Translations under genes and position numbers: made by a program
Shown: piece after piece, positions 1,482 to 47,445 of the stretch
Numbering within the stretch: position 1 is the first letter of the stretch
Layout of the letters: each line of letters begins with the position of its first letter
The notes under the pieces: model-generated
The model's database searches: none
What the model was told of the DNA's origin: nothing
The model's input: only the letters and a program-made list of their open reading frames with translations
Assembly (NCBI RefSeq): GCF_006345805.1
Contig: NW_021831752.1
Span: forward strand, 124,001 to 188,000
Source of the DNA: Octopus sinensis
Lineage: Eukaryota
DNA length: 64,000 nt
Direction: 5' to 3'

Positions 1482-1958
1482 ATGCCCGCGGAACGCGGCT
1501 CTTAACGACCTTATCAGGAGAGCTCTGGAAGTCGCCGGACTCCCTCCCTGCTTGAACCCACTGTTATCGATCGGGGGGACGGAAAAAGGCCTGAAAGGAT
1601 TACTGTGTTTCCCTACAACAGGGAAAAGCCTCTTACCTGGGATGCCTCGTGTGTGTACTCTCTCTCGCCTCAGAACCTGCTGATGTCCGCATCCGCTCCT
1701 GGATCTATTGTCACAACCGCGGTATGCAAAAAGATGCGGAAGTACTCCTCACTTATAGAAAAGTTCCAATTTCTCCCATTCGTAGTTGAGACTTCCGGTT
1801 CCTTGGGCGGTAAGGCAATCAGCTTCGTTCAGGAGATCGGGTCCCGGATGTCTGCTCGCACAGGTGACGCCCGCGAATCAAGATGGTTTTTCGAGCGGAT
1901 ATCCCTCGCGATAGTACGCTCTAATTCTTTCTCGATCGCGTCGGCTTCCCGTCTTTGA
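1482..1958 (+). mobile_element. CRE-clade non-LTR retrotransposon 3' fragment (restriction-like endonuclease domain)
   Basis: ALNDLIRRALEVAG..LEPTVIDRGDGKRPERITVFPYNREKPLTWDASCV..FLPFVVETSGSLG..RWFFERISLAIVRSN. Confidence 0.8.
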
Positions 1959-3804: not shown

Positions 3805-5076
3805 TGAAGGTTTTAATGGACCTCATCATGAATGTCGAGGACATTCGCGTTGTTCATTTTAATCAAAATGCAGAAAATAATTTTTTGATTTTTGGGGGAA
3901 GGTTTTAAGGACTTCATCATGTAAGTCGAGGACGTTGTAGTTGTTCATTTTAACCAAAATGCAGAAAATTTTTTTTTAATTTTTTTTGGGGGGGAAGATT
4001 TTAAGGACTTCATCATGTAAGTCGAGGACATTGTAGTTGTTCATTTTAACCAAAATGCAGAAAATTTTTTTTAATTTTTTTGGGGGGGAAGGTTTTAAGG
4101 ACTTCATCATGTAAGTTGAGGACATTGTAGTTGTTCATTTTAACCAAAATGCAGAAAATTTTTTTTTAATTTTTTTGGGGGGAAGGTTTTAAGGACTTCA
4201 TCATGTAAGTCGAGGACATTGTAGTTGTTCATTTTAACCAAAATGCAGAAAATTTTTTTTTAATTTTTTTGGGGGGGAAGGTTTTAAGGACTTCATCATG
4301 TAAGTCGAGGACATTGTAGTTGTTCATTTTAACCAAAATGCAGAAAATTTTTTTTTAATTTTTTTTGGGGGGGAAGGTTTTAAGGACTTCATCATGTAAG
4401 TCGAGGACATTGTAGTTGTTCATTTTAACCAAAATGCAGAAAATTTTTTTTTAACTTTTTTGGGGGGGAAGGTTTTAAGGACTTCATCATGTAAGTCGAG
4501 GACATTGTAGTTGTTCATTTTAACCAAAATGCAGAAAATTTTTTTTTAATTTTTTTTGGGGGGAAGGTTTTAAGGACTTCATCATGTAAGTCGAGGACAT
4601 TGTATTTGTTCATTTTAACCAAAATGCAGAAAATTTTTTTTTAATTTTTTTTGGGGGGGAAGGTTTTAAGGACTTCATCATGTAAGTCGAGGACATTGTA
4701 GTTGTTCATTTTAACCAAAATGCAGAAAATTTTTTTTTAATTTTTTTTGGGGGGAAGGTTTTAAGGACTTCATCATGTAAGTCGAGGACATTGTAGTTGT
4801 TCATTTTAACCAAAATGCAGAAAATTTTTTTTTAATTTTTTTGGGGGAAGGTTTTAAGGACTTCATCATGTAAGTCGAGGACATTGTAGTTGTTCATTTT
4901 AACCAAAATGCAGAAAATTTTTTTTTAATTTGTTTGGGGGGGAAGGTTTTAAGGACTTCATCATGTAAGTCGAGGACATTGTAGTTGTTCATTTTAACCA
5001 AAATGCAGAAAATTTTTTTTTAATTTTTTTGGGGGGAAGGTTTTAAGGACCTCATCATGTAAGTCGAGGACATCGT
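3805..5076. repeat. Tandem array of ~14 units of ~95 bp
   Basis: Unit ggttttaaggacttcatcatgtaagtcgaggacattgtagttgttcattttaaccaaaatgcagaaaa(T)n aa(T)n(G)n aa; internal units differ almost only in homopolymer length and the end units are degenerate. Confidence 0.95.
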
Positions 5077-5583
5077 ATTGCCAATTTGAAGTTGGTGTGC
5101 ACACACAGACAGACAGACAGACAGACACACACCATACCATTTTATTATTAAGATTAATAAAATTGAAGAAATGTAGATTTTGAATTCAAGGAATATTAAT
5201 TCTGACAAATACAAAAATCACTATTTGGTAAAGAGCGTTAAAAACTGTATAGTTATGCGTAATAATCATTTTATATTGTTTCGCAAATTTATTCGTAATT
5301 GAATATTCTTGTTCGTTCGTCGGTATGATTTCCAATGAGCAATCAAACACCCAGAAATACATTTGGACGGACGGTGGATTTTTTGGACTTTTAACTGGTA
5401 ACCACTATAAGGCGATGAATGAGATTCTGAACAAAAATTAGATCACTATTTCAAAATGTACCTCTTAGAGATTTTAGAAAGCAAGATTTCGGAATATTCA
5501 TGAAATCATTTTGAATATCTTTAAAAATGGTATGTTTTTATTTGTATAAAACATTTATTTTATTTTTTAAAATAACAATTATT

Positions 5584-5757
5584 ATCCCCCTGGCTGTTGA
5601 GACGTCAGGAATACAGGGGTCTTCTACTCGGACTCTACTTCAGCGGATTGGCTCACTAATCGAAAGGGTTACCGGCGACACGTGTGAGCACCGGTATTTA
5701 ACCGAACGAATATCTATAGCTATAGTCAGAGGCAATACTCTGGCTTTCTGCCAATGA
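5584..5757 (+). mobile_element. CRE-clade 3'-terminal fragment, same family as 63345-64000
   Basis: IPLAVETSGIQGSSTRTLLQRIGSLIERVTGDTCEHRYLTERISIAIVRGN; highly similar to 63841-64000. Confidence 0.85.
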
Positions 5758-8997: not shown

Positions 8998-9646
8998 TTT
9001 ATTGTTTAACTCTTTTTTTCGGAACTAATAAAACTTTTATTAATCTTTAATTCCAAAAAATTATTTAAAAGATGCAACATATTGTACTGCTTTTAAAAAT
9101 ATTAGTTCAATTAACCACATGCTATTCAACACACCATTAAACAAACCACATTTCAAAAAAATAAATTTTTATTGTTTCAAATATGAAAAATTAACCTGTT
9201 CCTAGGAATGCTAATCGAAAATAACTATAATAACTATTTTAACTTTAATAGCCTCGGATTGTTTAATGAAATAGCCATAAGCTCGTTTATTTCTTAGATT
9301 GTAAAATAAAAGTGCATGTACTTTCTTAATTTTCTTTCTATTAAATCGTAGTTTATTGTTTAATATAGGTGGATAATTGCCAATTTGAGTTAAAAATGCT
9401 TAAAAGTAAAATTTTCATCAAAAACTGCATTATCTTTCCATATAAATTTTGATCAAAATTTATGTACAAAAGATAATTGTACAATTTAAGTTTTAATTAT
9501 GCTTTCCAACTAAAATATTGACATTGTTAAAATATTGACAATGTAACTTTATTAATGAATTAACTTATTCTTATTAAAAACCATCCATAAAACGATACAT
9601 TTCGGGATTCAGGATAAAAGCAAATATTCCAAATCAATATGAATTA

Positions 9647-9757
9647 TCAAGAAATTAACAAATACTTAAATTAAAAACACTTAAGACCTTCAATTTCTAC
9701 TTTAGATTAAACCTATATTGAATTCAAATTAACATTCTTTAATGTTTAAGAAACAAC
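9647..9757. repeat. ~110-bp dispersed repeat, copy 2
   Basis: Matches 82-189. Confidence 0.75.
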
Positions 9758-9949
9758 AAAGAATAGTGGAGAAAAATATTTAAAGTGCAGCCCCTTGTTC
9801 ACTCGGAAGCTTTGATATGCAGGTTTTTTATTAGTTAGTTAATTAGTTTTTTATTAAAGTAATCATTTGAATTAGAGTGATTATTTTTAAAAGTTTTTTA
9901 ATTTTATTTTAAACAATTTCATCTTAATCCCGAAAATTTTTGAAATAAT

Positions 9950-11620
9950 TGTAGACAATGCTGAAATCATAATTACTTTGAAAAGACCAAACAAAATTAA
10001 ATTTCCAAAGTAATTTGAAATTTTAAACGTCTTTTCCGTTTTCTATTGAAAAGTAGTTAAAATAGAAAATTACTTTAATTGAATAATATGTCAAATTTAA
10101 AACTTTACACGTTAGTGAATAAGATTCTTTCTTTTCTGGTTTTTGATCTATTATTTGAAAAAGATTAAACTAGAATTTTTATCCTAAATAAACCTTTTCT
10201 ATTAATAGAATTTTGCAATTTTTTATCGATTTGCACAATTTTGCTTGTACTGATATTATACGACTCGTATAAAATCCAGCAATGAGGATCCATCCAATAA
10301 CATACAAATCAGTAGAGTTTTGGAAAATCTCTTCTCTGATTAAAATGAACTAAATTTATTACAATCGATGAAATATTAACTCGATAAACAATCCACCCCA
10401 AAAAGAATGCTACAATATAAAATGAAATTGAAATAATTAGGTTCATTTTTATCATAGATTCAAAATTCTATGTTTTTATTTATACTTTAAACAAACCTTA
10501 ACGTATGAACGTAATGAAAGCCAAAAATTAATTTTCTTTACAGAGCTTAATCTGAAATGAGGAATTCCCAGTTTTTCAGATTTTTGATTGTCAGAAATTG
10601 AGTTCAAGTACTTCCAACATTGAACTTGCTAAATTTTCTAAAATATTTTAAAAATTACTATGGTGTATGCTCTTTCGGAGCAACTCAATAAAAATATATA
10701 ATATAATGAAATATATATTTTTTGGAAAATAAGGGCCAAATAAAATATAAATTCCCTATCAATAATTAATGACACATTTGAACGTTTTAGTATCTCCCAT
10801 GGTAATACGAACAAAGTCTAACGGACTCAAGTTAAAAGTGATTGTATCTCCTGCGTTGTAAGCATAATATTTGAATAATTGATTGCTGAAACCAATTATA
10901 ACCGATGCGATTATAGCTAATATTAAATTTGCTTTATATTTGTGAGATTTTTTCGCTTTATCCACAATTATAGATGCGATTTCTTCTACAGAGAGAGTAA
11001 CCTTGTATTTAATATTATTCTTGATAAATAGACAGTTGACTAAATTATTTTAAGTATATAACATAACTTTTCTCATGATTCTTAATTTTAATTATTAATA
11101 TAAATACTTTATTTCTGATTTCTCCTAACTTGTCTTTAGATGATTTTTTATGTGAAGTTTGATAATGATTGCTATTTGTTTCGTCCTTAAATTTATCAAA
11201 ATTTTTCATTTTTACACATAATTTATCTTCAAATAAATCATGATTGGTGATTTCCTAATGAAATAATACTTTAGGGAACAAAAACATTTAAAGCGTCCTC
11301 TTTATTTGTTGTAAAACGTTTTCTAAGATTAAGATTTCCGACATTAGCTCTAAAAATAATAGTTTAATAAAAATATTACTTTCTAACAAATGTATCTAAA
11401 TCACTTTCGGTTTCAGTAAACTCGGAAATTTCTCTTAATTTTTATTAAAAAACTATATAACTGCAAATAGTATGTTTTCACGTTTTCCGAAACACAGTTG
11501 ATCATCAAAAGAATTATCACAAACGACATTGAATTGGCTATCATTTGATATATTGGAAAGGTCTAAACAAGAAGAATTAATTAAACTTCTATATTTTCTA
11601 TGTAGAAGTAGATAGCAATA
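9950..11620 (-). CDS. Possible multi-exon membrane-protein gene, unresolved
   Basis: Open minus-strand segments with hydrophobic stretches (ANLILAIIASVIIGFS; DLYVIGWILIAGFYTS); no family recognised. Confidence 0.3.
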
Positions 11621-12337
11621 AATAGGGCGATGTTAAAAAAATAAAAGTATACAAAAGTGAGGTAAATTGTTATCCCGGTTTGTCTAGTCCACCTATAAAA
11701 ATGAGATTTTTAGTTAAAACCATTTATAATAAAATGGCAATAAAATAATTTTTGTGAGTACACTGATGCAAGTAAATGTATTTTTTGATTTCTTGACAGC
11801 ACTAAGATCATTATATTCTTTTTCATGTTCAATTAAACACTCATTCTCTGCTATATTATTTTCAATCGCATCCTGTAAAATTTTTTATATAATTTTACAA
11901 CCGCATCAAAATAAGACATCAAATCGGAAAAGCATTTTAACAGTTATTTAAAGAAAAACAATTAGTTATCAATTTAGATAATAATGTTAGACAATTATCC
12001 GATGAATACAAAATTATTCAATTAAGATACTAACTTATATAGACAAATTGTTTAAAATTGTTACAATCGAACATTTTTGAATTTACGTAAATCATAATTC
12101 AAGAACAGCAAAATTTAAAAACAATTTTGTTAAATTATACTTTAATAGTACATCAAATTGTTTTTTATTAATAGATATCGATTATAAATCAAATAAACGC
12201 AAAAAATAAATTGAAAATTTTTGCTTGGTGACCGATACACTATTTTCCTATGCAGTTTCACAACAGGAAAAATCATTTAAAAATAATAAATTCTGTATTT
12301 AATAAATTAAAATATCAATCTTATTTATAAGGAAAAA

Positions 12338-15300
12338 TCAGTTGGATGACGGCGGATTTGTTTTAGATAATTTAATCCATTTCTCAATTATCATCGAATC
12401 ATTTATAATGAAAGAACTGACTAATTGGAATCCTTTTGTGGATAAAATATCCGCAATCTGAATATATATATAAGCCAGAGGTTTCCAAATGGGGAGGCGC
12501 GCCTCCCTAGGGAGGCGTTGACTCGTGTCAAGGGAGGCGCGAAAAGTATTTCAGAAACATTTTAGAAAATTATATCTATGTAAAAAACGTGACTATATTC
12601 GATAATAAGAGTTATTAATTTAAAAATTATATTTTTCAAAAATTTATTTAATTTATTAGACAATTAAATAATTTTAACACATGAATAAATTCTTGAGTGG
12701 TTGCAAAGAAAATTCACGAATAATAAAGATTTTGACGATGGTTCAAAAAATCAAAATGATTGGAATATAATCAATACCACTCCAAAGACAAGAAAATACG
12801 GTACTTTTTCGAAGTGGTCGCAGTTTTTTAGAAGATAATAAAATTAATTAATTTTTTAGTGAAAAATAGATTATTTAATTTATAACCCTCTATCAATAAT
12901 TTAAATGGTTATTAAATTATTTAAAAATTTATTTAAACCAATTTAGTCATTTTTAGTACGCGGCATCCAAATTCCAGGACTGTAGAAGGAATTTATGTCT
13001 TTTACAATCTGTGCAAAACATTCTTATAGTTCTGTATTGTTTTCGCCACATAAATTCTGAAAAAATAACTAACTAAAAAAACCTGCGAAATAAGATCCAG
13101 ATGATGTCTACAGCTCCTCTTTGAGCTTTATTCTTGCATTTTGCACTTCCCCACATTCGTTCTACTGTCTGGGTGTGCACTCCCGTCGTTGGATCCACAA
13201 AGAATTCTGAATATATTATATTTCCTTACTTATGGTTAACGGTTCGTTGTGTGTAGCCGTTTCAACCAATTGATCAGTTGAATACCCTAAATGTTAATCA
13301 AATAATGCTAACCTTTCCAGCAGTCACTATAAATAATGCTTCCCACCTCGACATATCGAATTACTAGACTGAGCAGTGTTTCTCTGCTCCTATCTTTTAA
13401 CAAGTGCGTCCACACAGACTTCACGTAAAAACATAGCCCAATCGACATATGTATGTTCACCCCAATTGTATTCGTGATGAAGCATTTGAAGGTATGCCTA
13501 TCGGAACTCCATAAGTATATGTAGGCGATGACATCCTCAAATGGCAATCTACAATTCTCTAACCAGGTATCTAGAATTATTGAGAGAAATTATACCTTTT
13601 TAATAGAACATTGGACTCTACAACCACTCTTGAGCATTTCCAATTGAGCTTCGGTCCCAAGACTAATTCCATCTGATGTCCTTCGGACATATACGTGATT
13701 TTGAAAGGATATCCACATTTTGCAGAAAATGCACTGCATCCTCCTTACTTATTGGGAGCTGTCGGAATTTGATGTTGCATAAGTCCACAAAGAATTTCCA
13801 TGTGACCTATAGTGCCAGTTTATATCAATATTAGGTACATGCTCGCCATAATATTAAAAAAAATTAGAAAATAAATTAGTAAAAAATTTAATAATATTTT
13901 AAATTATTGATAGAGCGACTTAAATAAAATATAATATATTCCACCTCAAAAATTATTAGATTTTTTAAAAGGCCTAAAAAAACTGCGACCACTTCGACAT
14001 AAGTACCGAAAATACTTTCCATCTTACTTATTGTTAGGATTCACACGTATCTTTGTTGATTCTATGGAAAAACCCCTCTGTTTGCTTTGCCTCAAAACAC
14101 TTGCAGCAGATAGTATGAGGCCATGCAAATTAAGAAGACATTTGAAACGATGCATTCTGAACATGTCCATAAGTCTGAAGAATTTTTAAAAGAAAATTAG
14201 AAGAGTTTGATAACCAAACGAAATCGTTAAAAAAACTTGATTAGAGGGTGTTTGAACTCAAAGATCAAGTTGCAGATTTTCTTGATGAAAATGATATTGA
14301 AGATGCAAAGTTGTTCAGGGATGATGACTTTATTGTCAAATTGCCTATTTAGTTGACATTTTTGGAAATTGAGTATATTGAATAAATCAATGCAGGGACC
14401 ACAACTACATTTATTCTCTCAAAAGGACAAAATAAAAGCATTTATGAAAAAATTGGTATTATGGAAATCAAATATACAAAAAAATATTCTATGACATGTT
14501 TCCACTTTTAAACACCTTTTGCGCCATAGTGAACATTGAAGCAAACAAAGACATATTTGCTGAACATTTGGATTGTTTGTTGAAGCATTTTGCTCACTAT
14601 TTTAAAGATCTCGACTGTAAAATGTTCGAATGGATACAGAATCCATTTGATGAAGAAGATAATCAATTTGCATTGACAACTTTTGAAAAAGAAAAATTGA
14701 TAGAATTGTCATGCGATACATTATTGAAACAAAAATTTGAGAGAGAACCGCTAATTCTTTTTGGTTGAATGTAAGAACGGAATATGAAATTTTGTCGAAT
14801 AAAGCAATGAAAGTTTTGTTGCCATTTGCTACTTCATATTTATGCGAAACTGGATGTTCTGCACTAGCTGCAATAAATCTAATATCGAACTCGTTAGTAG
14901 TGGACTAATGAGCTAAGAGTAGCACTCTCTGCGATGACACCAAGATTTGAAAAACTTTGCGCCAAGATGGAAAAAAAATTATCTCATTAACTTTTTGTTT
15001 TAAAAAAATTGTTTTGATAAAATAATAATTGTATTATATTATGGAATATAAAGGGAGGCGCAAGATTGTACTTTTTCTTAAGGGAGGCGCGTAAAAAAAA
15101 AGCTTGGAAACCTCTGATATAAGCTAACCTCAATCCTTGTCAAATCATTGTTTAATTTGAAGGAAATGTAACCATTTCCTCTAAACTCAATTGAAGATTC
15201 CATTTCTCCGTTACTTATTGTGATATTCCCAATTTCTGATGGTTCATTGAGACACTATTGATTTTATTTTGATTTATACTTGAAGTATTAAATCTTCATG

Positions 15301-15730
15301 TTCTTGGTGATAAAATGGAAGACAGAGTCCCGATATCAGACTTATGTGACTTGTCAGCGTAATAAATTTTGCATCGTCATAATTCAAATATGTTGGACCC
15401 ATGATTTCTAAATTAACGGGAATCCTTCTAGCTAAGTGTATTTTCTTCCATTGAAAATTAGTTTTTGACGACATAGATATTGAATTTCATTGTTTAAGAA
15501 ACTATATTTATAATATAGAATAACATATTTTATTGATTTGCTCACAATTAAAAAGAAAATTCTTACTGGTTCTAGATTTGAAAACTCTGTTAAATATTGT
15601 AGAATATGGCTGGCAATAATCAAGAAAAAACAAATTTCATTAAAAATCAGATCAGTAAAACCTCTGTTTACACCATCAAAGAAGTCAAAAATGTCAATTC
15701 AAGTAAAATATTGCAATTTTAATTAATTTT
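12338..15730 (-). CDS. Uncharacterised multi-exon gene whose 22-nt intron is interrupted by the hAT element; may extend further upstream
   Basis: After removing GT..AG introns the frame reads RRIPVNLEIMGP..EDLILQ^CLNEPSEIGNITISNGEMESSIEFRGNGYISFKLNNDLTRIE^IADILSTKGFQLVSSF across the hAT site; weak resemblance to a laminin-G domain start. Confidence 0.6.
12476..15116 (+). mobile_element. hAT (Buster/ZBED5-SCAND3-like) element, deletion derivative 1
   Basis: TIRs CAGAGGTTTCCAA..TTGGAAACCTCTG; 8-bp TSD ATATAAGC (12468-12475 and 15117-15124); gggaggcgc subterminal repeats; N-terminal and C-terminal (hATC-like) transposase remnants. Confidence 0.95.
12800..14007 (-). mobile_element. Merlin (IS1595/ISXO2-like) element family A, nested in the hAT, catalytic core deleted
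   Basis: ~30-bp TIRs GGTAC..TCGAAGTGGTCGCAGTTTTT; 8-bp TSD GAAAATAC (12792-12799 and 14008-14015); remnants LPFEDVIAYIYLWS and IIYSDCWKG. Confidence 0.95.
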
Positions 15731-16225
15731 GTTATTAAAAATAACGTTAAAGTATAAAATTCAGAGTTTTTTAGAAGTTCTATTTTTAAATAGAGTAGTG
15801 AAATCAACAAATCATATATTTTTCTATTAAACTAATTAATTGATTTGTTAAAGTCGACTCTGTGCACAATCTTCTTCTCTAAAAGATATCAGAAAAGACA
15901 TAATGGATATTTTTCTATAGTATCCATCTGGAATCCAGATACGGATTCATGCTGCAAGATGACATCAATGTCAGGCTTCTTTTCATATAAATTTTATAGA
16001 ACATTTTAATTTTACAGAATTCTTAATAAAGTAATATTTATTGGTCTGTTTTCTATACGTTTGAAAACCTTAATATGAACTCTATTTATCTTAAACATAT
16101 CTATTAAATGACTCATTTAAATAATCTGAAAATTTTACTACATCCAGTTTTTAGTAAGGGCTCATTAAAGCGTTGACATCTTGAACATTAAATTTATATT
16201 ATTAACAAAAAACATAATAAAAAAT

Positions 16226-19200
16226 TTATTTAGAATATTGTGTTGAAGACAAAGAATCATTGTTGGTAGATTCAAGAACAGCTGAACTAATGAAATGCAA
16301 TCTCTCCGTATACTTAAAGATATAAAAACTATTTTTATCACCTTATCTCCAAGATATTTGTACAGCATACTCAGAATTTCTCTATATCCTTCGATCATCA
16401 CGTTGCGCAAGATATGATTAGAGGGGACATATTGCGTATGTTTCTGAATTAGTAAAGCGGAATATTCCACGAATTTACTAATAGTAATATATTTCCCATT
16501 TTTCTAACCAATATGTCTCTTTTAGCTCGATCAGGAGATTTTTGTCAAATTTATCAACGTATTCATCTGCTAGAAACTCTTTAGCGTACTGCATTGGTCC
16601 GGCATTTACCAAAAAATAAGAATAATTTTAATCAAACTTTTACGAGGACAGATCCCTGAAGAACATTTTCAAGGAAGATTGGATTTGGGTCTTTTGCATT
16701 TGCCAAATCCTTCATTCGTTCCACTTGAATGTTTAAAGCTTCGTTTGCGCATTCCAGTGACGAATAAAATATATTTTCTGATTTTTTAACCAAAATATGT
16801 TTTTTTAAAAACGGAAACGAATATTCAGCTGAAATTAATATAATTTAAAACTTGTTAGTAAAGTTCGAGTTTTTGTTATGAATTGTACCAATAGTCCAGT
16901 TGATTTATTTTCCGAACTAATCGGATGATAAGAGTCGACAAAAAAGGAATTCAAATTAGCTCTTCTATTTTTCCCAGATTTAAGTTTTATTGTGTTGTCT
17001 GGGGTTACCAGCACAACGTGAATAATTGGTTTATTTTCGTTAATATCCTTAAAATGAAAAAAATAAAATACATATGGCACTGAGTTCGAAATTGACCAAT
17101 CAATCTTTTCTTTTTGGAACTGAGTCAAAATACACTCTTCAAATTCTCGAGAATTCAGAGTGCTTTTGTAAACATAATCTTTTTCTACATTTCCTCTTAT
17201 AGAGACCCAATAGTAAAATAGCTGATCCTCAACATTGCGACTACTTTTGGTCAATATCTGATATGCTCTCAAAAGAAGCTCAGTAGACTTGGATGCACTC
17301 TAAACCAACAAATCATTTGATGGTACTTCATAGTCTTCTATCTTTTCATGGACATAAGTCTTTAATTTGATTAAGTCGATAGAAAATTTTGAAATTGTTA
17401 AATTTGACAAAATCTCCAGTGCAGTGTTCAAATAATTTAAATATTCAGACTAATAAGTAAACTTAAAAAATAGCAAACAATTGTCGAGACGTTTTCAGTA
17501 TTGTCTATTGAAAAGGTATCGGAAAATTCTGACATTAAGTTTGGTGTCAAATTCGTCAACTGAGCCATGTCATATTCCATATCCATGCCTATAACATAGT
17601 ACCAAATAAAACCAACCTTGTTTTGAGAGGGAGTTTACAGTTACTGCAGAAGCATGGATATGACATAAGGCGGCCTAAATGTCAAAACTCAATTACTTCA
17701 ATGAAGGCATTATCTTGTAAATAAAGTCTGCCTATTTCGAGAAGATAGAAAGTTCTAAAGTTAGGAATGTTCCTGCATGACTCCGCAAGATCATAAAACA
17801 TGTCGACTAGTCGGATGGAGGGTACGTTATCATCCATTTTGAGCTCTGTTGTTTTTAGCATCAGCACAGTCAAATTGTAAAGGTCTTTTATTTCCTAACA
17901 TTTAAAGACTGTAAATATATACTTTAAAATACTCAGTTCCTTCGACAACTAGAACCAAAAGTTCCAAGAAATAGTAATATGTGGACTTGTTTAGTTCAAA
18001 TGACATTTCTGAAACTAATCTGGACGTGGCGATAAATGTTTGAATCATTATTTTGGAACAAGAATTGAAATGATCAAACGAGGTTGAACAAAGACTGGTG
18101 ATCAACCAAACTGCGCTAAGACAGACCTCATATGAGCAGTATAAAAAAGATCTTACGACCTAAAAACATAAATAACGTTTTATGGATGCCTGGTTGCAAA
18201 TATTAAAGCACAATTCAGACTCTCCTTCATAAATGAACTTTGGATAGCGTTCTGTGATAAGTCCAAGAGAGATAAAAACGTGTTGGTGTACAGAACAATC
18301 AAATACTGGTTTAAGCATCATAATGTGAATATATATAATTTTTTTCAAGTTTTTTTCTGTCATGTTTTCCTTTTTGTTTAACAATACAAATTACTTTATT
18401 ATTACATGATATACTGAGTAGAACGTCGACTATCGTTATGCAAGTGCCAAGGAATGTGGACTGCAATTTAAACATTTCTTTATTGAATGATTCTATTATT
18501 TAAATGAAACGTTCAAAGATACCTGATTGAAATTCGACCAAATTTGAAAATAATTCAACAGAAAATCTAATGGTGTTTATTATAAAAAATACTCAAAAAA
18601 ATAAAATAGGTTTTTACGCTCTCTAAATGATCGAGTGTCAAAATAATTTGAAAGTTTTTCTTAGAGATATAATTAATAATTCTAACCATCGGAAATGTTT
18701 TTTAGTACAAAAAGGCAACACAATGTAATTCCCTGGGCTTCTTCTTCCGTAAAATTAATTCTATAATTAATTGATGTTCCATCACTAACTGAGAAATAGA
18801 AGTCAAACACGTTTCCGAAATTGTGGCGTCAACATTCGAACAGTTCGAGGAAGGATTGCCTTATAAATTAAAATTAAATTAAACTCACCCGATGATGCTG
18901 GTTTGTGTAGAATTATCGGAGACAAATGCGTGTCCGCTACTCCAATTGTCATGTTCACCAAAGGAATATATAAGTCTGATATTATTAATCTCTAAATAAT
19001 AAAGAAAAATTTGAAATATTCAACTAACATGTGATAAGAAAGAATCGGAATTTTCGAGATTTGATAGATGTTCATACAGCATCTTTATGGCAAGTGACCG
19101 ATTTAAATCGGATTCCATTAATAAAATTTTGACTAATTCCACCATCATTGATGAGGGATTTGATTTTTCAGGTTCGCCATGAATATTAGCATATCCGTTC

Positions 19201-22200
19201 GGAGATTCGTATATTCGTATAAATTTCCCATAAAGTCTTATCAAATTAGTAATATTCTACTCAAATTATATATGAACAGTTACATGACTGTCAAAGCACC
19301 AGGATTCGTAAAATATTTTAACGAGATTTAATATAGCTGACGGCTTAATAATCGAGCTTAGCATCTATATTTTATAATTTATAAAATAAAAAAAACTTCA
19401 AAAAATTCGCCAAATGTTTCCGAAATATCAAGATGATTCTGAACATTCATATCTGACATTATTTTGATAAAATTATAAGCCATTTTCTCCAGGAATATCA
19501 TCATATCGGCTATTGTCTTCTCCAGTAAGCTCTGTAACATGTAGATTTAACATAAAACCTCGGAAATTTTGCTACAATTGACAACATTGTAAAGAAATAA
19601 TAAGTCAACTGCAATCATTTTTGTGATAGCTGGAAATGAATCCAAAATAGCGTAAATAAATTCTTGGCAAGTAATTTTAGTGATATCTGCACAAATTTTT
19701 GTAATTATCAGACAGAATTGATTTGGGAATTTCAATCTTTTTGTGGAATCTTGAATAATATAAAACTGTTTCTAACAATATGACAAAATATTGATAACAT
19801 TTAATAGAGTATCTAATAGTTGGAATTTCTCAGCTTTTATTATGCTGCTAAAGAAATAAACAAGAATTCTAAAGACTATCAACTGAGTCTTGACGTTAGA
19901 AGTTAATATCATTAATGTGCACATTCGGTCAATTAAAATTGGCATAAAATTTATAAAGACTTTCAGCTCTACAAATTGAAGATTCTAAACATTTAATTAT
20001 ACATCCTTACTTCCAAAATTTCCAAAAAATTTGGCTTTGTAGATAAAGATGTAAAATTTTCATAAGTTACCTTCTCGATGACTGAGAAAAATTTGGAAAT
20101 ACGTCGGCACTAAATTGTTATTAATATTTAAATTACATGGGTATTCACGCTGGAAAACAGTTTAAGAGTGAGAGTAAATAGTTCTCGATTGGTTTCTAAC
20201 CTCCAGTCATACGTTTCGAATTCGTATGAAAGGTAGCCTTCGACTAGATCGGTGACCAAAGGAATAGAAAATTTTCCACTTTTGAGAGAAGTGAATCCTT
20301 CTGCTAGTATTCTTATAAATGAGTATCCAATGATATCTCTTTCTATTTTTTTGAAAGATTTTTTATTTTCCCCATTTGTCTTGTTCTTATAGGTAGAAAC
20401 GTTATAAAATGTGAAAAGTAAATGGCATTTTTCGTGAATTCGAAGAGGCAAGCTAAATTTAATCTAAAAAATACATATTATAACATTGATATAATATTGG
20501 ATTAAATAATAGCAAGCAGCAATGACAGCTATTAATTTAGGCCATTTTGCAAAAATTAAATAATTTACTTCGTCGTAGAATTCAACAATTTCACTTGTTC
20601 GATCATTTCTAAGAACTGTCGATTTTTGAACAGAAATAAATGTATCATTCCATGGTTGCCCATAAATTAACTACAAAAACAAATAGACAAATAACTGGAA
20701 TATCAGGAGCATTGGGGCTGTCTAATTCTCTAAAAGATACTGCGCATTGAATATTCTGAAACTATAATTACATTAAGTGTTAACCTACTTACTTTTTTGT
20801 TATCAATTTTTATGCTTTGAGGATAAATATATAAATTATTCACATAATCCGTGAATATTCTCGCATTGCTAAACGCCGCATCATTTTCACTGTATTTGAC
20901 GTCCTCAACTTGTATATATTCATATTGACAGTTTCCATCATTACCATTGACGCTTGTTAAAGAGGAAGATAATACTACATATATTTGATTATTTATATAC
21001 TTGGCGTTTTCTCAAATTGAGCCAGAGAGGAAATCATTATTGAAACGGACAAAAAAGAACTACCCAAACGATGAAGATCAGTTCTAAATAATTTAAAATA
21101 AATATATTACTTTGAATTTGTAGAGATTGCGTTGCTGATCACTTCCAGAGAATATCCGTTTGCTTCTAGTTGAAACAAAGGTACATTCTGGGTATTTCTG
21201 GTTTTAAATAATGATCTATGATTAAGAATAATCAAACATCGACGGAACCTAAATCCAAAGGCAAATGGAGTTCGGAAACTAAAATCAAAATTTGAAGTTA
21301 GAAATTTTTTTTCAAGGTAATTGGGTTTTTGAAGTTTGGATGATTGGATTCCCCACATTCTTTCAACAATAAACACAAAGAATAAATTGGCCGAGACAGA
21401 ATGTAAGCGAAATAATCCGTCAAAATCTTGAGTAAAAATCACAATTATTACTTTTCATCGAATCGTCAGTTCTAGGGAAACTGAATGAAATGCTAGCACT
21501 ATCGCGTTTAAGAGGAGACACAATTTTCTTTATCGGTTCAGGAATCCAACTTTGATAGTGATTTTCTGTGATTTTTTCGGCACAAGAAATATCCAAAATA
21601 AAAGTCGTTATGAAATATGCTTCAAGCTGAATAGGTAAACAATTTAATAATACATTCTGTTGACTAAAACCTTGGTGAACAATTGAGAGGGAATCTATCT
21701 TGAGACTGACAAAAATTTCCGGTTTTTCGACGTTAGGCTAATCCTTAAAAATTAATTTTTATTTACAAATTTATTTTTGATATCCTCTGGGGAAAGAAGA
21801 GTGAAGTGTGACTTCCGTGAACAAATCACGTCTTCGGATACCGTTTTTAAGTACTTAAACTTTAATTCAACTAGTTTTACCTTGATTACATCCATGTTCA
21901 TTTGATCTTTATCAATGTCTTGAAATTTGTCTACAAAAATTTAAAACAGCCTTATAAATACTGTTTAATAGAAAAGTCAATTTTGTTTTATTTTGTTTAT
22001 TGAAGGACAAGACAGAACCCAGTTCTGTGTTTTTTGACTCAATATTCTTCTTTAAATAATTAATTTTAATTACTTTTCTTGAATTGCAGTTGAAAAATTC
22101 AGGATTCGAAATTCTTCCCAATTGACAACGACTAATTTTAACAAGACATTAAAGTACTTGTCAATTTTATCAGCATAATGTGAGGTTTTTAACGTTTTTA

Positions 22201-23547: not shown

Positions 23548-24106
23548 CATAGGTTGCCCTGGCAGTTCCCTCAGACGATCGCCAACGAGACTCTTTGGAA
23601 AAGATGGCTAGTCTCGTTGGGATCTCTGTTTACCCTTGCAAACTTCGTCCCCAGCCGACGAAGAAAAGAAAATGATTCCGCGCCGATGACCCCGCTATTG
23701 GTGCAAATGTGTGGTTTCTTGCCAGGGACGAGTATTTTTCGCGAGTTCCGCGGATCCTGCCGCCTAATTCAGGCTCAGCAACTGCCGAGATCAGATTATG
23801 TGCCGAGAATGTGTCGGAGCATTTCGCGTCCCAAATGAGGCATTTTCAGGGAAATTTTGTCATGCACTGAAAGCCACTCTGGAGAGCATGTTTTTCGAGT
23901 ACAAACATGGCTTCAGTGAAATTCTGGACTCTGCAAATTCCGTTCTCTATGAAGACTGGCGGAAATATAATTTCTCTATGAAGATCAGCAAGTCCCTTAA
24001 GAGACCCAGAGACTGCACGCCCCAGGAGGAGATTGAGGATCATGGCAGGGAAGATCAAAATGGAGTCATGGGGAACTCGGGAAGCAAAAATTTGAGAGTC
24101 GTCTAA
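23548..24106 (+). other. GC-richer, frameshifted ORF remnant, probably of transposon origin
   Basis: Overlapping open frames with no tiny introns and raised GC, next to a CRE fragment; no diagnostic motif recognised. Confidence 0.3.
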
Positions 24107-24154
24107 TTATTAGTTTAGCTCAATTTTGGTCTTTCAAATGTTAATAGGAATTAG

Positions 24155-24330
24155 GATTCGCCAGTTGCCGCACCGCGAATAGCAAACGAGTTACTTTGCA
24201 AGATTGCTATCGATATCCTCTGGTACAGCCAGCTGGTTTCCCGGTGGTCATTGGTCTTCTTTCCAACGAGTTTCCCAATGACCGAAAGAATCCTCTTCCC
24301 CGCGGGCCCGATCACACCGCTTACTTCAAG
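24155..24330 (-). mobile_element. CRE-clade 3'-terminal fragment, another family
   Basis: EVSGVIGPAGKRILSVIGKLVGKKTNDHRETSWLYQRISIAILQSNSFAI. Confidence 0.75.
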
Positions 24331-35990: not shown

Positions 35991-36059
35991 ATTACAATTC
36001 CTAATATAATCTGTCGAATTATAAAAACTAAAAAAGTGCAAATAAACCATCATTAAAAA

Positions 36060-37013
36060 TCATCCAAAATGAGTATTCGAACACATAGCATCAACCAATT
36101 TATTCTCGACTAATTTGAGAGCAGGCAATGTCATAACCAGTCCCTCATGTTTGAGCACACTATACACATTCAGTCCTACACATCACACTACTGACTACCA
36201 TAATATGGCATAACATTGAACTGGTCTGTCCCCTCCACACACCTCCCCACACTCCCCTCCATCCAATCATTCCTTAAATATCACAAATACTCAACTCTGT
36301 TATAAATAACACAGAATGACCCCATCCCCGTGCTTCCACCAATCTTCTGAGGTACTAAAACTTTATTTTATAGCCAGACCTGAGGATCTTCCGAAGGGAT
36401 ATTCAAATTCTCGACCACATGGAACAATTTCTGACATCCTCAACACAAATACCTGCCTGTGCTTGACCGTCAAGGCAACTCGGAGACCGAGGACCCTTTT
36501 AAAGAAGGGCAGCATATAAAAGTGACTCTTAGGACCCCTGGGACCCACAGCAGCCCCTCCTTTGACCCAGTGGGGGGCTCGGACACTGCCCTGGGCTGCC
36601 CGACCCATCCGCTTTTGGGGCCACGGTTTTCGACCTCCTCCGCGGAGTTCTGCTCGGGAGGGCAAGAAACGGTAATCCTGGGACTGAGGGACAGGAATAC
36701 AATCATGCGGTATTTGGTCTGCCAGACTACATTGTTGTGGAGAATGTCGATCCTGTGGGTCACGTGTGGAGGCTACCGGGGATATGTGGCGAAGATGTCG
36801 GGATTTAGGTCTGTTATGCCTGTGAAGTTTTGGTGGATTGTGTCCACGGATTCGATCCAGGCTTGTTCGTGTGGACGTGGTGTGGCTGAGGGTTGTCTAA
36901 TGTGGGGGTTGCTTACTTTGAGGTGTTGTGAAGTGGGGAAATGTGGTTGAGAGGGCTTTGGTTAGATTTTGGCTAAGATTTGAAACTGATGACCACGTGA
37001 ATAGACATTTCAT
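36060..37013 (-). CDS. MRPL4: Mitochondrial ribosomal protein uL4m
   Basis: [18 protein letters not shown]^[70 protein letters not shown]. Confidence 0.95.
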
Positions 37014-37199
37014 AATGATTTATTTTAAAATTAATTTAAATAATAGAGTTAAGAATAAAACAATTGGAGAGGTTTTTTTAACATAATTTTAATAGCATCT
37101 CCAAAAACTCTACCCAATTAAAACAAAATATATGATATAGAGTGCAGTTTTTGATTTTTTGTTAGTTTATGTCTTAATTCTCTTTTGTGGAACGTATTA

Positions 37200-37720
37200 A
37201 GGGATTTTAGTTCAGACTCAGATCTTCCTCATATTCCTCCGTTCTATAGGCTAAACAAAAGCTTGTTCCAATTTTGAGTTTTGCCATTTTCGCCTGTTCT
37301 GTTATCTTCCTGTTGATTTTGTCACAAGCCCAGAATAAAACCGAGTCGGAAGTGAAACTATGACAGCTGAAATGTCAATTTATTTATTTATGATGCTATG
37401 AATCATACAAAGCAGCACTGAAACAATAAGAATTATTAGTTTGGTCTATTTCTCTCTAACCTGGGCGACATGCCGTAAAACATCTACCCTAACCCCGTCC
37501 TTAAAAATTTTCTCGACACTCCGAAGGTCTCTGTTCAGTATATCTCACATTTCACGTAAGAGGTCTGCCTAGTCTAATATACTATTTTTTGTTTAAAGTT
37601 TTTTTTATAAGTTCTACTTTAAACCTGAAATAGTATAAAAGACTATTCCGACGTTCCACACGTGATAGAAGAGAGGAAGTAAGGACATAAAAATATAAAG
37701 GGACTGCCATTGACAAGATC
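37200..37720 (-). CDS. Possible small multi-exon membrane-protein gene, unresolved
   Basis: Several GT..AG mini-introns and open exons (MSLLPLFYHVWNVGIVFYTIS; SDSVLFWACDKINRK); no complete frame could be built. Confidence 0.3.
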
Positions 37721-37994
37721 TATTGAGTTGACAGTCAGCTTGTCGATTAATTAGTATTTGTCAATAAATGCATTAATTGTTTATATATAAGTTATTATTA
37801 CTATTCTTTGGGTGATTAGAGAAATTGGTCGACATATACGGCGAGAGATATTTAAAAATTTTGGTAAAATATGTTTATGTAGAAAAATTATTTTTATTAT
37901 AAATTATATAATTTTTATAAGTAATATACATTGAGGGAAACACAAATTAATATAAAAGGCATCAATCAATTATATTTTTGTTGTGCGATTCATT

Positions 37995-38997
37995 ATGTGT
38001 GATGATAGTGATGATGGCTGGATATTTGGCTGCGGTATTTAAAAAAATACAAAAAAATAGATTTTTCCGACTTGAAAGGAGACGAGATGGACAATTTCAC
38101 CACCAGATCATCCACCAACATCCCAGACTTCCAAACCTCAATAAAGTAACATTTTTCCCTCCAAAAACCAAGGAAAATTCCAGAAATAACAGTAAAGTAT
38201 AAAATGAACCACAAATCCCGCGGATATGCCTTAATAATCAACAACCGTGACTTTAACTCAGGAACCCACATGTCATCCCGGAAGGGCACTGACCAGGATG
38301 CCCAAAGTCTGTACAACCAACTAGTCGGCCCGATGGGATTCGACAAAACACGTGTAAAAGTATTCAACAACGTCACTGCCTGTAATATGAAAAAATTGTG
38401 CAATCAAGGTGGTTTCCGTTTTTAGAGTGGTTAGCCTCGTTGGTTGACCACAAGGACTGCGACATGTTTTTTTGCGCGGTTTTGTCCCACGGAGATTCGT
38501 CCTATGTTTATGGGGTGGATGGGCCTCTCTCACTCTCCAGTCTACTCGAGCCATTTAAGGCTGACGTATGTCCCACTTTGGGGGGAAAACCGAAGGTTTT
38601 TTTAATTCAGGTGGGTTTATTGGGGTATTTGAGGCATGTCGGGGAGACCGGCTGATGAAGGCCGCGGAGGTTTACGACACAATCGACAGTTCTGCCACGA
38701 CCAGCAGGATTCCGTCCGAAGCTGATTTTCTGACTGTTTATTCGACGGTGGAAGGTTTGTGGGGTGAGAGATTTGGGGTATTTTTCGTGGAGGAATTCGT
38801 CACACGGGTCGTGGTTTATTCAGGCGTTTTGTGCGTGTGTGGCCGAGTTTTGTGGAGAGTTGGATTTGGTGAAAATTGTTTCCCGGGCTTCACATTTGGT
38901 GGCATTTGAGTTTGAATCGAACGCGGAGGGGATTTTTGGTGGTAAGAAACAGGTCCCTCAAATGGTCTCCACCCTGACTAAAGATATTTACTTGTGA
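37995..38997 (+). CDS. Effector caspase (caspase-3/7-like)
   Basis: Short prodomain with DEMD; RGYALIINNRDF; catalytic SHG and Q^ACRG (23-nt intron 38611-38633); GYFSWRNSSHGSWFIQ; KQVPQMVSTLTKDIYL. Confidence 0.95.
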
Positions 38998-39009
38998 ATT
39001 GTCGTCTAA

Positions 39010-44940: not shown

Positions 44941-47445
44941 TCCTTTGTGCCGCGTGAACAACAATACTGTCCCACAACCTTCTCCAGGTGCCTCTCCTCT
45001 TTGCCAATTCTCTCAGGTTGTCGAGATCATCAGCAGTTTCGAGTTTCCTCCCAATAATTTTGAGATCCTGATTTAGCACCGATGGAAGTCTTGTCCTTGG
45101 TCTTTTTCGGAATGTGTCTCCGCATTGCATGAAATATGTTTCCATAGCAATGTTAGCAGGAGTGGCGACGTCCATCCGCAGAATGTGGCCAAATAGCCTC
45201 CATCGTGATTTCAGGATTTCGATCGAAAGAATTTCTGAGTTGCATAATTTGTATAGGTTGTGATCTTCTGCGGGTAGCGGATGTTGAGTGCTGCACGTAA
45301 TTGAGATCTATAGAAACTGTCTAGTTCAGAGGTTTCCAAATGGGGAGGCGCGCCTCCCTAGGGAGGCGTTGACTCGTGTCAAGGGAGGCGCGAAAAGTAT
45401 TTCAGAAACATTTTTTAGAAAATTATATCTATGTAAAAAACGTGACTATATTCCGATAATAAGAGTTATTAATTTAAAAATTATATTTTTTCAAAAATTT
45501 ATTTAATTTATTAGACAATTAAATAATTTTAACACAGACAATTAAATAATTTTAACACATGTTTCTGTCTCTTCAAATGCTTTACTAGCATCGTACAAAG
45601 TTTCTTACAGGATTGCAAAATGCAAGAAACCGCACAATATCGGAGAAACTCTAGTTTTGCCAGCAGCTATCGATATGGTTGAAGCAATGTTTGGCGAATC
45701 CTATGCAAAACAATTACAGCAAATACCGCTTGCTGATAACACAGTCGCTAGAAGAATTGATGACATATCTGAAGATCTTTGTGATCAGTTGGTTTCTCGA
45801 CTACGTAACTGTAAATTTGCTATACAAGTTGATGAGGGAGCTGACATAAATAAAAATGCACATTTAATTGCATATGTCAGATATGCTGAAGAAAGTACAA
45901 TAATAGAAGATCTATTATTCTGCAAACCATTTCCTGGAAGGAGCACGGCCAATGAAATTTTTAATATAATTGATACTTTTTTTGAAGAAAATAACATAGA
46001 ATGGATCAATTGTGTTGGACTTTGTACAGACGGAGCACAGTCAATGTCAGGAAATAAATCTGGTCTTCAAGCTCTTGTAAAAACAGAGCACCAGAATTAT
46101 CTGGACGCACTGCATGCTGCACAGATCAGCACTTGTCTCAAAGAATATGAGTCCAGAACTGAACGATATTTTTGCGCAAATTACAAAAGTTATAAACTAC
46201 ATAAAACACAGTCCTTTAAGAGCTAAGCTTTTTGCAAAGCTGTGTGAAGATATGGATTCAAAATATACATCGCTTTTATACTATTGTGAGGTACGCTGGC
46301 TATCTCGTGCAAAAGTGATTAGAAGGGTGTTTGAACTCAAAGATCAAGTTGCAGATTTTCTTGATGAAAATGATATTGAAGATGCAAGTTGTTCAGGGAT
46401 GATGACTTTATTGTCAAATTTGCCTATTTAGTTGACATTTTTGGAAATTGAGTATATTGAATAAATCAATGCGGGACCACAACTACATTTATTCTCTCAA
46501 AAGGACAAAATAAAAGCATTTATGAAAAAATTGGTATTATGGAAATCAAATATACAAAAAAATATCTATGACATGTTTCCACTTTTAAACACCTTTTGCG
46601 CCATAGTGAACATTGAGAGCAAACAAAGACATATTTGCTGAACATTTGTTGTTTGTTGAAGCATTTTGCTCACTATTTTAAAGATCTCGACTGTAAAATG
46701 TTCGAATGGATACAGAATCCATTTATTGATGAAGAAGATAATCAATTTGCATTGACAACTTTTGAAAAAGAAAAATTGATAGAATTGTCATGCGATACAT
46801 TATTGAAACAAAAATTTGAGAGAAGAACCGCTAATTTCTTTTTGGTTGAATGTAAGAACGGAATATGAAATTTTGTCGAATAAAGCAATGAAAGTTTTGT
46901 TGCCATTTGCTACTTCATATTTATGCGAAACTGGATTTTCTGCACTAGCTGCAATTAAATCTAAATATCGAACTCGTTTAGTAGTGACTAATGAGCTAAG
47001 AGTAGCACTCTCTGCGATGACACCAAGATTTGAAAAACTTTGCCCAAGATGGAAAAAAAATTATCTCATTAACTTTTTGTTTTAAAAAATTGTTTTTGAT
47101 AAAATAATAATTGTATTATATTATGGAATATAAAGGGAGGCGCAAGATTGTACTTTTTCTCTAAGGGAGGCGCGTAAAAAAAAGCTTGGAAACCTCTGGT
47201 CTAGTTTCTGATTTTCCAATTTTGTGAGTCCTGAGGTTCCACAGTTGTAGGTAAGGATTGGCAATACAAACGAGTTGTATATCCTTATTTTCGTTTTTCT
47301 AGTTAGCTTCTTTTTAGTTCCCCATAAAGACATAAGCTTTCTAAAGGCTCCATTTGAAAGGATTTTCATTCGGGTAACATCCTTTGTGTCCCTCAGGAGC
47401 GTTCCCAACTTTTTGTGCCTTCTCCATGATTCATCAATGCCGTCT
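44940..47445 (-). mobile_element. RTE-like LINE 3' part, split by hAT copy 2
   Basis: SWRRHKKLGTLL..KTKIRIYNSFVLPILTYNCGT..KLENQKLD | SFYRSQLR.. RPRTRLPSVLNQDLK..LETADDLDNLRELA; the frame continues across the hAT TSD. Confidence 0.85.
45327..47198 (+). mobile_element. hAT element, deletion derivative 2, same family as 12476-15116
   Basis: Same TIRs; 8-bp TSD GTCTAGTT (45319-45326 and 47199-47206); keeps the catalytic middle (FAIQVDE, CTDGAQSM, EVRWLSR) but lacks the N-terminal region. Confidence 0.95.

What the first reader, a model, noticed from the sequence alone, without database searches (positions are those of the whole stretch)
12458..15128. A 2.6-kb hAT (with nested Merlin) inserted inside a 22-nt host intron
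Removing the element and one TSD copy regenerates gttagcttatatatatattcag, a 22-nt GT..AG intron on the minus strand. The flanking exons then join in frame (..NDLTRIE^IADILSTKGF..). The intron is now 2671 nt long in a genome whose introns are nearly all below ~40 nt. It is a natural test of whether this spliceosome can still remove long introns, or whether such insertions kill genes and so enforce tiny introns.
Basis: seen in the sequence. Interest (0 to 1): 0.75.

Follow-up and report, generated by a model that had tools for sequence, protein, structure and literature searches.

The report
Transposon lodged in a tiny intron
A young hAT DNA transposon, itself carrying a Merlin transposon, sits inside a 22-base intron of a small conserved gene in an animal genome whose introns are about 25 bases long; it most likely derails splicing of that gene copy rather than forming a working 2.7-kb intron, so it is an ordinary insertion that is easy to test.

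Summary
A 2,641-bp non-autonomous hAT element lies at 12476-15116. It has perfect 13-bp terminal inverted repeats and an 8-bp target-site duplication, ATATAAGC. A 1,208-bp Merlin element is nested inside it at 12800-14007.

Removing the element and one duplication copy regenerates a 22-nt GT..AG intron in a 146-aa, three-exon gene on the minus strand. The spliced exon 2/3 junction falls inside the most conserved block shared with distant animal homologues, so the intron and the gene are real.

Seventeen exactly placed introns elsewhere in the window measure 23-31 nt. The genome is a divergent spiralian with ultra-short introns, most likely a dicyemid.

The insertion puts an AG 26 nt downstream of the donor, inside the hAT repeat. 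In all 17 reference introns the acceptor is the first AG at least 19 nt from the donor. I therefore predict splicing to this decoy and a truncated protein lacking exon 3, making this a recent loss-of-function allele.

The locus is a confounded test of long-intron splicing, because the decoy interferes. This is a new member of a known kind, of modest interest.

The parts
15280..15474 (-). Host gene exon 1 (ATG at 15474-15472; 65 codons)
   Evidence: Translation. It aligns to homologues P0001, P0002, P0003 and P0005.
15255..15279 (-). Host intron 1, 25 nt, GTATAAATCAAAATAAAATCAATAG
   Evidence: Its removal restores the frame between exons 1 and 2.
15129..15254 (-). Host gene exon 2 (42 codons, ends ..NDLTRIE)
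   Evidence: It contains the conserved GNGYI motif.
12458..15128 (-). Interval between the donor (GT at 15128-15127) and the authentic acceptor (AG at 12459-12458). It is 2,671 nt now and 22 nt in the empty state.
15103..15128 (-). Predicted decoy intron, 26 nt, GTTAGCTTATATCAGAGGTTTCCAAG. Its AG lies at the inner edge of the hAT terminal repeat.
   Evidence: Its use is inferred, not shown.
12338..12457 (-). Host gene exon 3 (39 codons plus TGA). It encodes most of a helix and the last two strands of the predicted fold.
   Evidence: The conserved D.L..KG[WF].L and EKW motifs are.
12468..12475 (.). hAT target-site duplication, left copy, ATATAAGC
15117..15124 (.). hAT target-site duplication, right copy, ATATAAGC
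12476..15116 (+). Non-autonomous, internally deleted hAT element of Buster type. Transposase remnants are in sense on the + strand, which is antisense to the host gene.
   Evidence: 13-bp perfect repeats. Subterminal AAGGGAGGCGC repeats. 97-98% identity to copy 2. Frameshifted N-terminal and C-terminal transposase remnants.
12800..14007 (-). Nested Merlin element, internally deleted. Transposase remnants lie on the minus strand, the same sense as the host gene.
   Evidence: Repeats and duplication GAAAATAC. DDE_Tnp_IS1595 scores 37.3 bits on this copy's own translation.
45327..47198 (+). Sibling hAT copy with duplication GTCTAGTT, inserted in a LINE-like reverse-transcriptase reading frame.
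   Evidence: Dimer_Tnp_hAT scores 23.2 bits against a cut-off of 21.4.

Best explanation
**Shown.**
- A recently mobile, non-autonomous Buster-type hAT transposon, already or later invaded by a Merlin element, inserted by cut-and-paste into the 22-nt second intron of a small three-exon gene. The insertion duplicated 8 bp of the intron.
- The gene encodes a 146-aa protein of a rare, uncharacterised animal family.
- The host is a divergent spiralian with ultra-short introns, most likely a dicyemid.
- Because of the duplication, the donor keeps 12 nt of original intron. The acceptor keeps 18 nt, enough to hold any branch site.
- The three exons are still open.

**Inferred.**
- This spliceosome appears to take the first AG roughly 19-31 nt downstream of a GT.
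- The donor will therefore most likely pair with the AG that the hAT terminal repeat places 26 nt away, not with the authentic AG 2,671 nt away.
- The mRNA would then run into the transposon and encode ..NDLTRIE-LFFYAPPLRKSTILRLPLYSII*.
- That product loses the 39 residues of exon 3, which form a helix and two core strands.
- This gene copy is then a null or strongly reduced allele. Its exons look intact only because the insertion is young.
- It is probably polymorphic or mildly deleterious, not a functioning long intron.
For: **Structure.**
- Repeats and target-site duplication; sibling copy; nested Merlin.

**The gene is real.**
- phmmer against 1.8 billion representative proteins gives four homologues at E 2e-5 to 5e-4. 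One is from the annelid Owenia fusiformis.
- The alignment has 16 invariant columns. The conserved block GNGYI..L.DD[IL].R.E..D.L..KG[WF].L runs without a gap across the exon 2/3 junction.
- The AlphaFold2 model has pLDDT 77 and pTM 0.71.

**Splicing rule.**
- Seventeen in-window introns measure 23-31 nt. In every one the acceptor is the first AG at least 19 nt from the donor.
- In the filled allele AGs lie at 5, 15, 17 and 26 nt.
- The decoy and the original intron score the same, 1.7, on a splice-site matrix that barely separates real introns from background. This fits the published finding that the signals are reduced to GTa..AG (PMC13644364).
- That paper analysed intron length classes of 20-27 nt. 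The decoy's 26 nt falls inside that range, while 15 and 17 nt fall below it.

**Other obstacles in the insert.**
- There are 10 AATAAA or ATTAAA hexamers on the transcribed strand and 105 internal GT..AG pairs of 20-35 nt.

**Youth of the insertion.**
- The duplication and terminal repeats are perfect, and the sibling copy is 97-98% identical.

**Context.**
- The other native genes I examined are compact with tiny introns: SLC6, DOCK, caspase, AAT, succinyl-CoA ligase beta and MAT.
Against: - There are no transcript data of any kind, so use of the decoy is a prediction.
- The "first AG at least 19 nt away" rule rests on 17 introns. By my own rough estimate, such an absence of earlier AGs would arise by chance about 1-5% of the time.
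- Longer introns do exist. About a third of dicyemid introns are 30 nt or more (PMC6543705), and myxozoans have introns over 100 bp (PMC13644364). Some correct long-range splicing cannot be excluded.
- All three exons are intact, which also fits a still-functional gene.
- The organism was inferred, not identified.
Confidence: 0.58

Rival explanations
1. The 2,671-nt interval is removed as a true long intron and the gene stays functional. In that case the ultra-short-intron spliceosome has no hard upper length limit.
For: The donor and the last 18 nt of the intron, including the acceptor, are untouched because of the duplication. The exons are open. The dicyemid intron length distribution has a tail: mean 38 nt (PMC6736024), median 27 nt with about one third at 30 nt or more (PMC6543705). 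Myxozoan introns over 100 bp show no extra signals (PMC13644364).
Against: A decoy AG lies 26 nt from the donor, in the 20-27 nt range the literature analyses, and scores as well as the original. No true intron in the window exceeds 31 nt. Junction gaps reach 56 nt at most, apart from one 136-nt gap that contains a small exon. The insert carries many poly(A) hexamers and internal GT..AG pairs.
Confidence: 0.2
2. The flanking reading frame is not a functioning gene. It is a decaying or dispensable paralogue, so the insertion is neutral and says nothing about splicing constraints.
For: There is no Pfam or PDB sequence match. No word-index hit and no identical protein are on record. Homologue E-values are only 2e-5 to 5e-4. 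A Trp conserved in all four homologues is Phe here. The family has two paralogues in one other sample.
Against: Three exons are open across 146 codons. Two independent tiny introns each restore the frame. Sixteen invariant columns are retained. The fold prediction is confident and compact.
Confidence: 0.1
3. The element is removed at the DNA level in somatic cells, either by transposase-mediated excision or by the chromatin elimination and circular-DNA formation reported for dicyemids. The tiny intron would be restored before transcription, as with a ciliate internal eliminated sequence.
For: Dicyemid somatic cells are reported to undergo chromatin elimination and to form extrachromosomal circles (Noto et al. 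2003, as cited in PMC6543705). The element has intact ends and a 97-98% identical sibling, so the family moved recently.
Against: There is no evidence at this locus. Neither hAT copy in the window encodes an intact transposase. hAT excision normally leaves footprints (general knowledge). The organism is only inferred to be a dicyemid.
Confidence: 0.05

Closest known systems
Buster family of hAT DNA transposons (for example TcBuster and the Mar MITEs)
   Same: 8-bp duplications that fit the Buster consensus nnnTAnnn in both copies, ATATAAGC and GTCTAGTT (PMC3517528). Short repeats beginning CAGAGG, as against Mar's CAG(G/A)GGTAGGC. A hAT C-terminal dimerisation domain in the sibling copy. Internally deleted non-autonomous copies.
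   Different: No intact transposase is present in the window. The catalytic core was not recognised by Pfam or PDB sequence searches. The host lineage is unusual, and no phylogeny was done.
Merlin / IS1016-like DNA transposons
   Same: A DDE_Tnp_IS1595 domain above the Pfam cut-off, an 8-bp duplication, and roughly 30-bp repeats starting GG.
   Different: The transposase gene carries two ultra-short introns of 26 and 23 nt, in the host's own style. The copy in the finding has an internal deletion and frameshifts.
Maize Ds (hAT) insertions processed through splice sites in the element's ends (Wessler and colleagues, 1987; general knowledge)
   Same: A hAT terminus supplies a splice site that the host machinery can use, which changes the mRNA.
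   Different: In maize, Ds sits in exons and is largely spliced out, giving leaky alleles. Here the element sits in an intron, and its end is predicted to capture the donor and exonise the transposon.
Ultra-short-intron genomes: Dicyema and myxobolid myxozoans (PMC13644364, PMC6736024, PMC6543705)
   Same: In-window introns of 23-31 nt with only GT[ATG]..AG signals. The genome is AT-rich and repeat-rich.
   Different: Those papers describe genome-wide length distributions. None that I found treats transposon insertions inside such introns.
Ciliate internal eliminated sequences
   Same: Transposon-derived DNA interrupts a gene whose introns are tiny.
   Different: Ciliates remove these sequences as DNA before expression. 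The standard genetic code and the animal genes here exclude a ciliate, and no DNA-level removal is shown.

Membership tests
hAT superfamily | 8-bp target-site duplication | tested here: met
   ATATAAGC on both sides of 12476-15116. GTCTAGTT on both sides of 45327-47198.
hAT superfamily | Short terminal inverted repeats of the CAG/YARNG type | tested here: met
   CAGAGGTTTCCAA matches 13/13, in four occurrences that form two elements.
hAT superfamily | Transposase with the hAT C-terminal dimerisation domain (PF05699) | tested here: met
   The sibling copy scores 23.2 bits against a cut-off of 21.4. The decayed translation of the copy in the finding gives no hit at E <= 0.1. Its membership therefore rests on 97% DNA identity to the sibling.
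hAT superfamily | RNase-H-like DDE catalytic core | tested here: inconclusive
   The core region of copy 2 (45546-46428) has no Pfam family and no PDB sequence match, Hermes included. The core is deleted from the copy in the finding.
Buster family of hAT | Duplication consensus nnnTAnnn | tested here: met
   TA lies at positions 4-5 in both duplications. The consensus is from PMC3517528.
Buster family of hAT | Transposase groups with Buster in a phylogeny | not tested
Merlin superfamily | IS1016/IS1595-like DDE transposase | tested here: met
   PF12762 scores 46.3 bits for copy 2 plus copy 1 and 37.3 bits for the nested copy alone, against a cut-off of 27.
Merlin superfamily | 8-9-bp duplication and terminal inverted repeats | tested here: met
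   GAAAATAC at 12792-12799 and 14008-14015, with a 21-bp perfect repeat core.
U2-type ultra-short spliceosomal intron (empty-site state) | GT..AG boundaries and a length within the genome's range | tested here: met
   22 nt with GT..AG ends. In-window introns are 23-31 nt. The literature analyses length classes of 20-27 nt (PMC13644364).
U2-type ultra-short spliceosomal intron (empty-site state) | Removal restores the frame and a conserved protein segment | tested here: met
   The alignment to four homologues crosses the junction without a gap.
U2-type ultra-short spliceosomal intron (empty-site state) | Transcript evidence for the junction | not testable with these tools
   No RNA data are available, and no identical protein is on record.
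GFRP / KCTD12-16 H1-domain fold (host protein) | Structural similarity of the predicted model | tested here: inconclusive
   The best Foldseek hit is the KCTD12 H1 domain, at E 1.4e-3 with TM 0.43 (query) and 0.63 (target). GFRP comes next. There is no sequence-level support.

The most novel reading that the evidence does not exclude
In this presumed dicyemid, whose somatic cells are reported to eliminate chromatin and form DNA circles, the hAT/Merlin insert is cut out of the DNA in somatic nuclei. That would restore the 22-nt intron before transcription. It would be an animal counterpart of ciliate internal eliminated sequences, and would let transposons sit inside genes that cannot tolerate long introns.
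Probability: 0.04. Interest if true: 0.85.

Novelty: new member of a known kind. Interest (0 to 1): 0.32.

Why it matters
What limits intron length in the few animal lineages with introns of about 25 nt is an open question (PMC13644364). A dated, cleanly bounded transposon insertion that keeps the donor, the acceptor and the last 18 nt of a 22-nt intron is a usable natural experiment. Public RNA and DNA reads for the species could show whether the donor still finds the distant acceptor, falls into the 26-nt decoy, or neither.

One locus, confounded by that decoy, cannot settle the question. The useful product is the prediction: first AG at least 19 nt away, with the decoy junction at 15129^15102. 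It also suggests a design for a genome-wide survey of transposons in introns. Otherwise this is an ordinary intronic transposon insertion.

Tried and rejected
1. **Ciliate germline hypothesis (tiny introns, AT-rich, transposon as an eliminated sequence).** Rejected. The host gene and the conserved MAT, AAT, succinyl-CoA ligase, caspase, SLC6 and DOCK genes read with the standard code. The best named MAT hits are all spiralian animals.
2. **Myxobolid cnidarian.** Disfavoured. MAT affinities are spiralian, the host-gene homologue is from an annelid, and a caspase is present, whereas myxozoans are reported to have lost apoptotic genes.
3. **Naming the host protein.** Pfam, PDB phmmer and a PDB profile search found nothing credible. 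Only a weak fold resemblance emerged.
4. **Conservation of the intron position.** The Owenia homologue has one 242-nt intron at a different site (ITG^HC). Two other homologues are intronless. The 22-nt intron is therefore lineage-specific, not ancestral.
5. **Search for an empty-site allele, other copies or the source.** The exact empty-site 47-mer and the 32-nt element end gave no match in metagenome contigs, and the element end gave none in viral contigs. No encoding contig is on record for exon 1 or for a hAT reading frame.
6. **Splice-site weight matrix from 17 introns.** It does not separate real introns from background GT..AG pairs. The leave-one-out median equals the background mean. 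It cannot rank decoy against authentic site beyond showing that they tie.
7. **Second transposon-bearing intron in the window.** None was found in SLC6, DOCK, caspase, AAT, succinyl-CoA ligase beta or MAT.
8. **Coordinate error.** My first script was off by one at the right end. Searches corrected it.

Full report
**1. What is in the sequence**

Reading 12000-15600 and scanning for repeats shows a perfect 13-bp inverted repeat, CAGAGGTTTCCAA, at 12476-12488 and 15104-15116. Identical 8-bp direct repeats ATATAAGC flank it at 12468-12475 and 15117-15124. The element is therefore 12476-15116, or 2,641 bp.

The same terminal sequence occurs once more as a pair at 45327 and 47198. That copy has its own 8-bp duplication, GTCTAGTT. 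It is 97-98% identical to the first copy over both ends. Each end carries three or four copies of AAGGGAGGCGC.

The two copies are complementary deletion derivatives:
- The copy in the finding keeps a frameshifted N-terminal zinc-finger-like segment and the C-terminal region.
- Copy 2 keeps the central region and the C-terminal region.

The C-terminal translation of copy 2 passes Pfam's threshold for the hAT dimerisation domain, at 23.2 bits against 21.4. The more decayed translation of copy 1 does not. Both duplications have TA at positions 4-5, which is the Buster-family consensus nnnTAnnn (PMC3517528).

Inside the hAT, at 12800-14007, lies a 1,208-bp element. It has a 21-bp perfect repeat core within repeats of about 30 bp, and an 8-bp duplication GAAAATAC. 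Its minus-strand translation matches the ISXO2/IS1595-like DDE domain typical of Merlin elements, at 37.3 bits against a cut-off of 27. A 97% identical copy starts at 47446.

**2. The host gene and its intron are real**

On the minus strand the CDS has three exons: 15474-15280, 15254-15129 and 12457-12338. Together they encode 146 residues. Intron 1 is 25 nt. Joining the flanks of the hAT and removing one duplication copy gives GTTAGCTTATATATATATTCAG, a 22-nt sequence with GT..AG ends. Each intron is needed to keep the frame.

The protein has no credible Pfam or PDB sequence match, and no hit in the word-indexed database. An exhaustive phmmer search of 1.8 billion representative proteins found four small proteins at E 2e-5 to 5e-4. 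One is from the annelid Owenia fusiformis.

In the alignment, the best-conserved block is GNGYI..L.DD[IL].R.E..D.L..KG[WF].L. It runs straight across the exon 2/3 junction with no gap. That would not happen unless exactly these 22 nt are removed. An AlphaFold2 model from this shallow alignment is compact, with pLDDT 77 and pTM 0.71. Its best structural matches are the KCTD12/16 H1 domain and GFRP, but only weakly.

Exon 3 encodes most of one helix and the last two strands of the model. The Owenia gene has a single 242-nt intron at a different position, and two other homologues are intronless. The 22-nt intron is therefore lineage-specific.

**3. The genome**

Conserved genes in the window read with the standard code and carry only tiny introns. 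Seventeen introns that I could place exactly measure 23-31 nt, with a median of 25. They come from S-adenosylmethionine synthetase, aspartate aminotransferase, succinyl-CoA ligase beta, host intron 1 and a Merlin transposase intron.

Sixteen of the 22 junction gaps in four conserved genes are tabulated. Fifteen of those are 23-56 nt, and the one 136-nt gap holds a small exon. The MAT gaps I read individually are all 23-30 nt. The SLC6 and DOCK genes are equally compact.

The best named relatives of the MAT protein are all spiralians, at only 59-65% identity. The window also holds a caspase. Among animals, introns this short are reported only for Dicyema and for myxobolid myxozoans (PMC13644364). 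Published figures for dicyemid genomes are:
- D. japonicum: 36.7% GC, 49% repeats, mean intron 38 nt (PMC6736024).
- Dicyema sp.: median intron 27 nt, with about two thirds under 30 nt (PMC6543705).

I conclude that the source is a dicyemid or a close analogue. This is an inference, not an identification.

**4. What the insertion does to splicing**

Because of the 8-bp duplication, the donor keeps 12 nt of original intron and the acceptor keeps 18 nt. That is enough to hold any branch site.

The hAT end, however, reads CAGAGGTTTCCAAG on the transcribed strand. AGs now lie 15, 17 and 26 nt from the donor. In all 17 reference introns the acceptor is the first AG at least 19 nt from the donor, and all skipped AGs lie 18 nt or closer. 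The original 22-nt intron obeys the same rule.

The literature analyses intron length classes of 20-27 nt and finds the signals reduced to GTa..AG. A weight matrix built from the 17 introns does not separate real introns from background, and it scores the decoy and the original identically.

I therefore predict a 26-nt splice, 15128-15103, into the transposon. The predicted product is ..NDLTRIE-LFFYAPPLRKSTILRLPLYSII*. It lacks exon 3.

Other features of the insert point the same way:
- The nearest GT upstream of the true acceptor is 65 nt away.
- The insert holds 10 poly(A)-type hexamers on the transcribed strand.
- It holds 105 internal GT..AG pairs of 20-35 nt.

None of this is shown by RNA data.

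**5. Rival explanations**

- True long-intron splicing cannot be excluded, because longer introns exist in these lineages.
- The gene could be dispensable.
- Dicyemids are reported to eliminate chromatin and to make DNA circles in somatic cells, so removal at the DNA level is conceivable. Nothing at this locus supports it.

**6. Verdict**

The structural interpretation is right. The framing as a clean natural test of long-intron splicing is weakened by the decoy acceptor and by the published tail of longer introns.

This is an ordinary kind of event: a young transposon in an intron, probably a loss-of-function allele, in an unusual genome. It comes with a specific prediction that is cheap to test.

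Noticed in passing
window 47943-47968 and 47862-47884 (copy 2); 13287-13312 and 13207-13229 (nested copy), minus strand: The Merlin transposase gene carries two ultra-short GT..AG introns of 26 and 23 nt. Removing them restores a continuous DDE transposase sequence (..YSDCWKG|YSTDQLV.. and ..TVNHK|KFFVDPTTG..). The transposon's own gene uses the host's tiny-intron style.
   Followed up: partly
window 44800-47500: hAT copy 2 sits inside a LINE-like reverse-transcriptase reading frame on the minus strand. Joining its flanks restores ..LTKLENQKLDSFYRSQLR... Merlin copy 2 begins about 250 bp further on, at 47446. This is a nest of transposons, in contrast to the genic site of copy 1.
   Followed up: partly
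window 12490-12545, 15051-15095, 45341-45391, 47133-47173: Subterminal AAGGGAGGCGC repeats occur three or four times per hAT end, including the palindrome GGGAGGCGCGCCTCCC. There are 9 matches in the window against 0.08 expected. They are probably transposase-binding sites.
   Followed up: no
window 3806-5077: A tandem array of a 95-bp unit, 13.4 copies at 96% identity, lies upstream of the SLC6 transporter gene.
   Followed up: no
window 36000-39000, 43000-44400, 48700-50200, 56700-58000 versus 9000-22000: Composition is strongly heterogeneous. The conserved housekeeping genes (caspase, AAT, succinyl-CoA ligase beta, MAT) lie in stretches of 40-47% GC. The DOCK gene and the host gene of the finding are about 30% GC.
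   Followed up: no
window 53118-55795 (minus) and 58421-59346 (minus): A second, AT-rich hAT family has a 294-aa reading frame and a C-terminal region of the ..TSYCERGFS.. type. A second Merlin-like family has ..IVEIDESHFSKRKYNRGR... Both are distinct from the families in the finding.
   Followed up: no
window 1506-1955, 5515-5754, 23574-23768, 24154-24330, 63633-63998: Five copies of a peptide ending ..VETSG..G......IG......G......ERI..AIVRGN.. are scattered on both strands. It is presumably the C-terminus of a multi-copy retroelement protein.
   Followed up: no
L002 and L003 (ENA sample ERZ24900295): Two intronless paralogues of the host protein family occur on contigs of about 500 kb from an unidentified eukaryote in one assembly. 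Only four homologues (plus one spurious repetitive hit) turned up among 1.8 billion representative proteins, so the family is very sparsely sampled.
   Followed up: no
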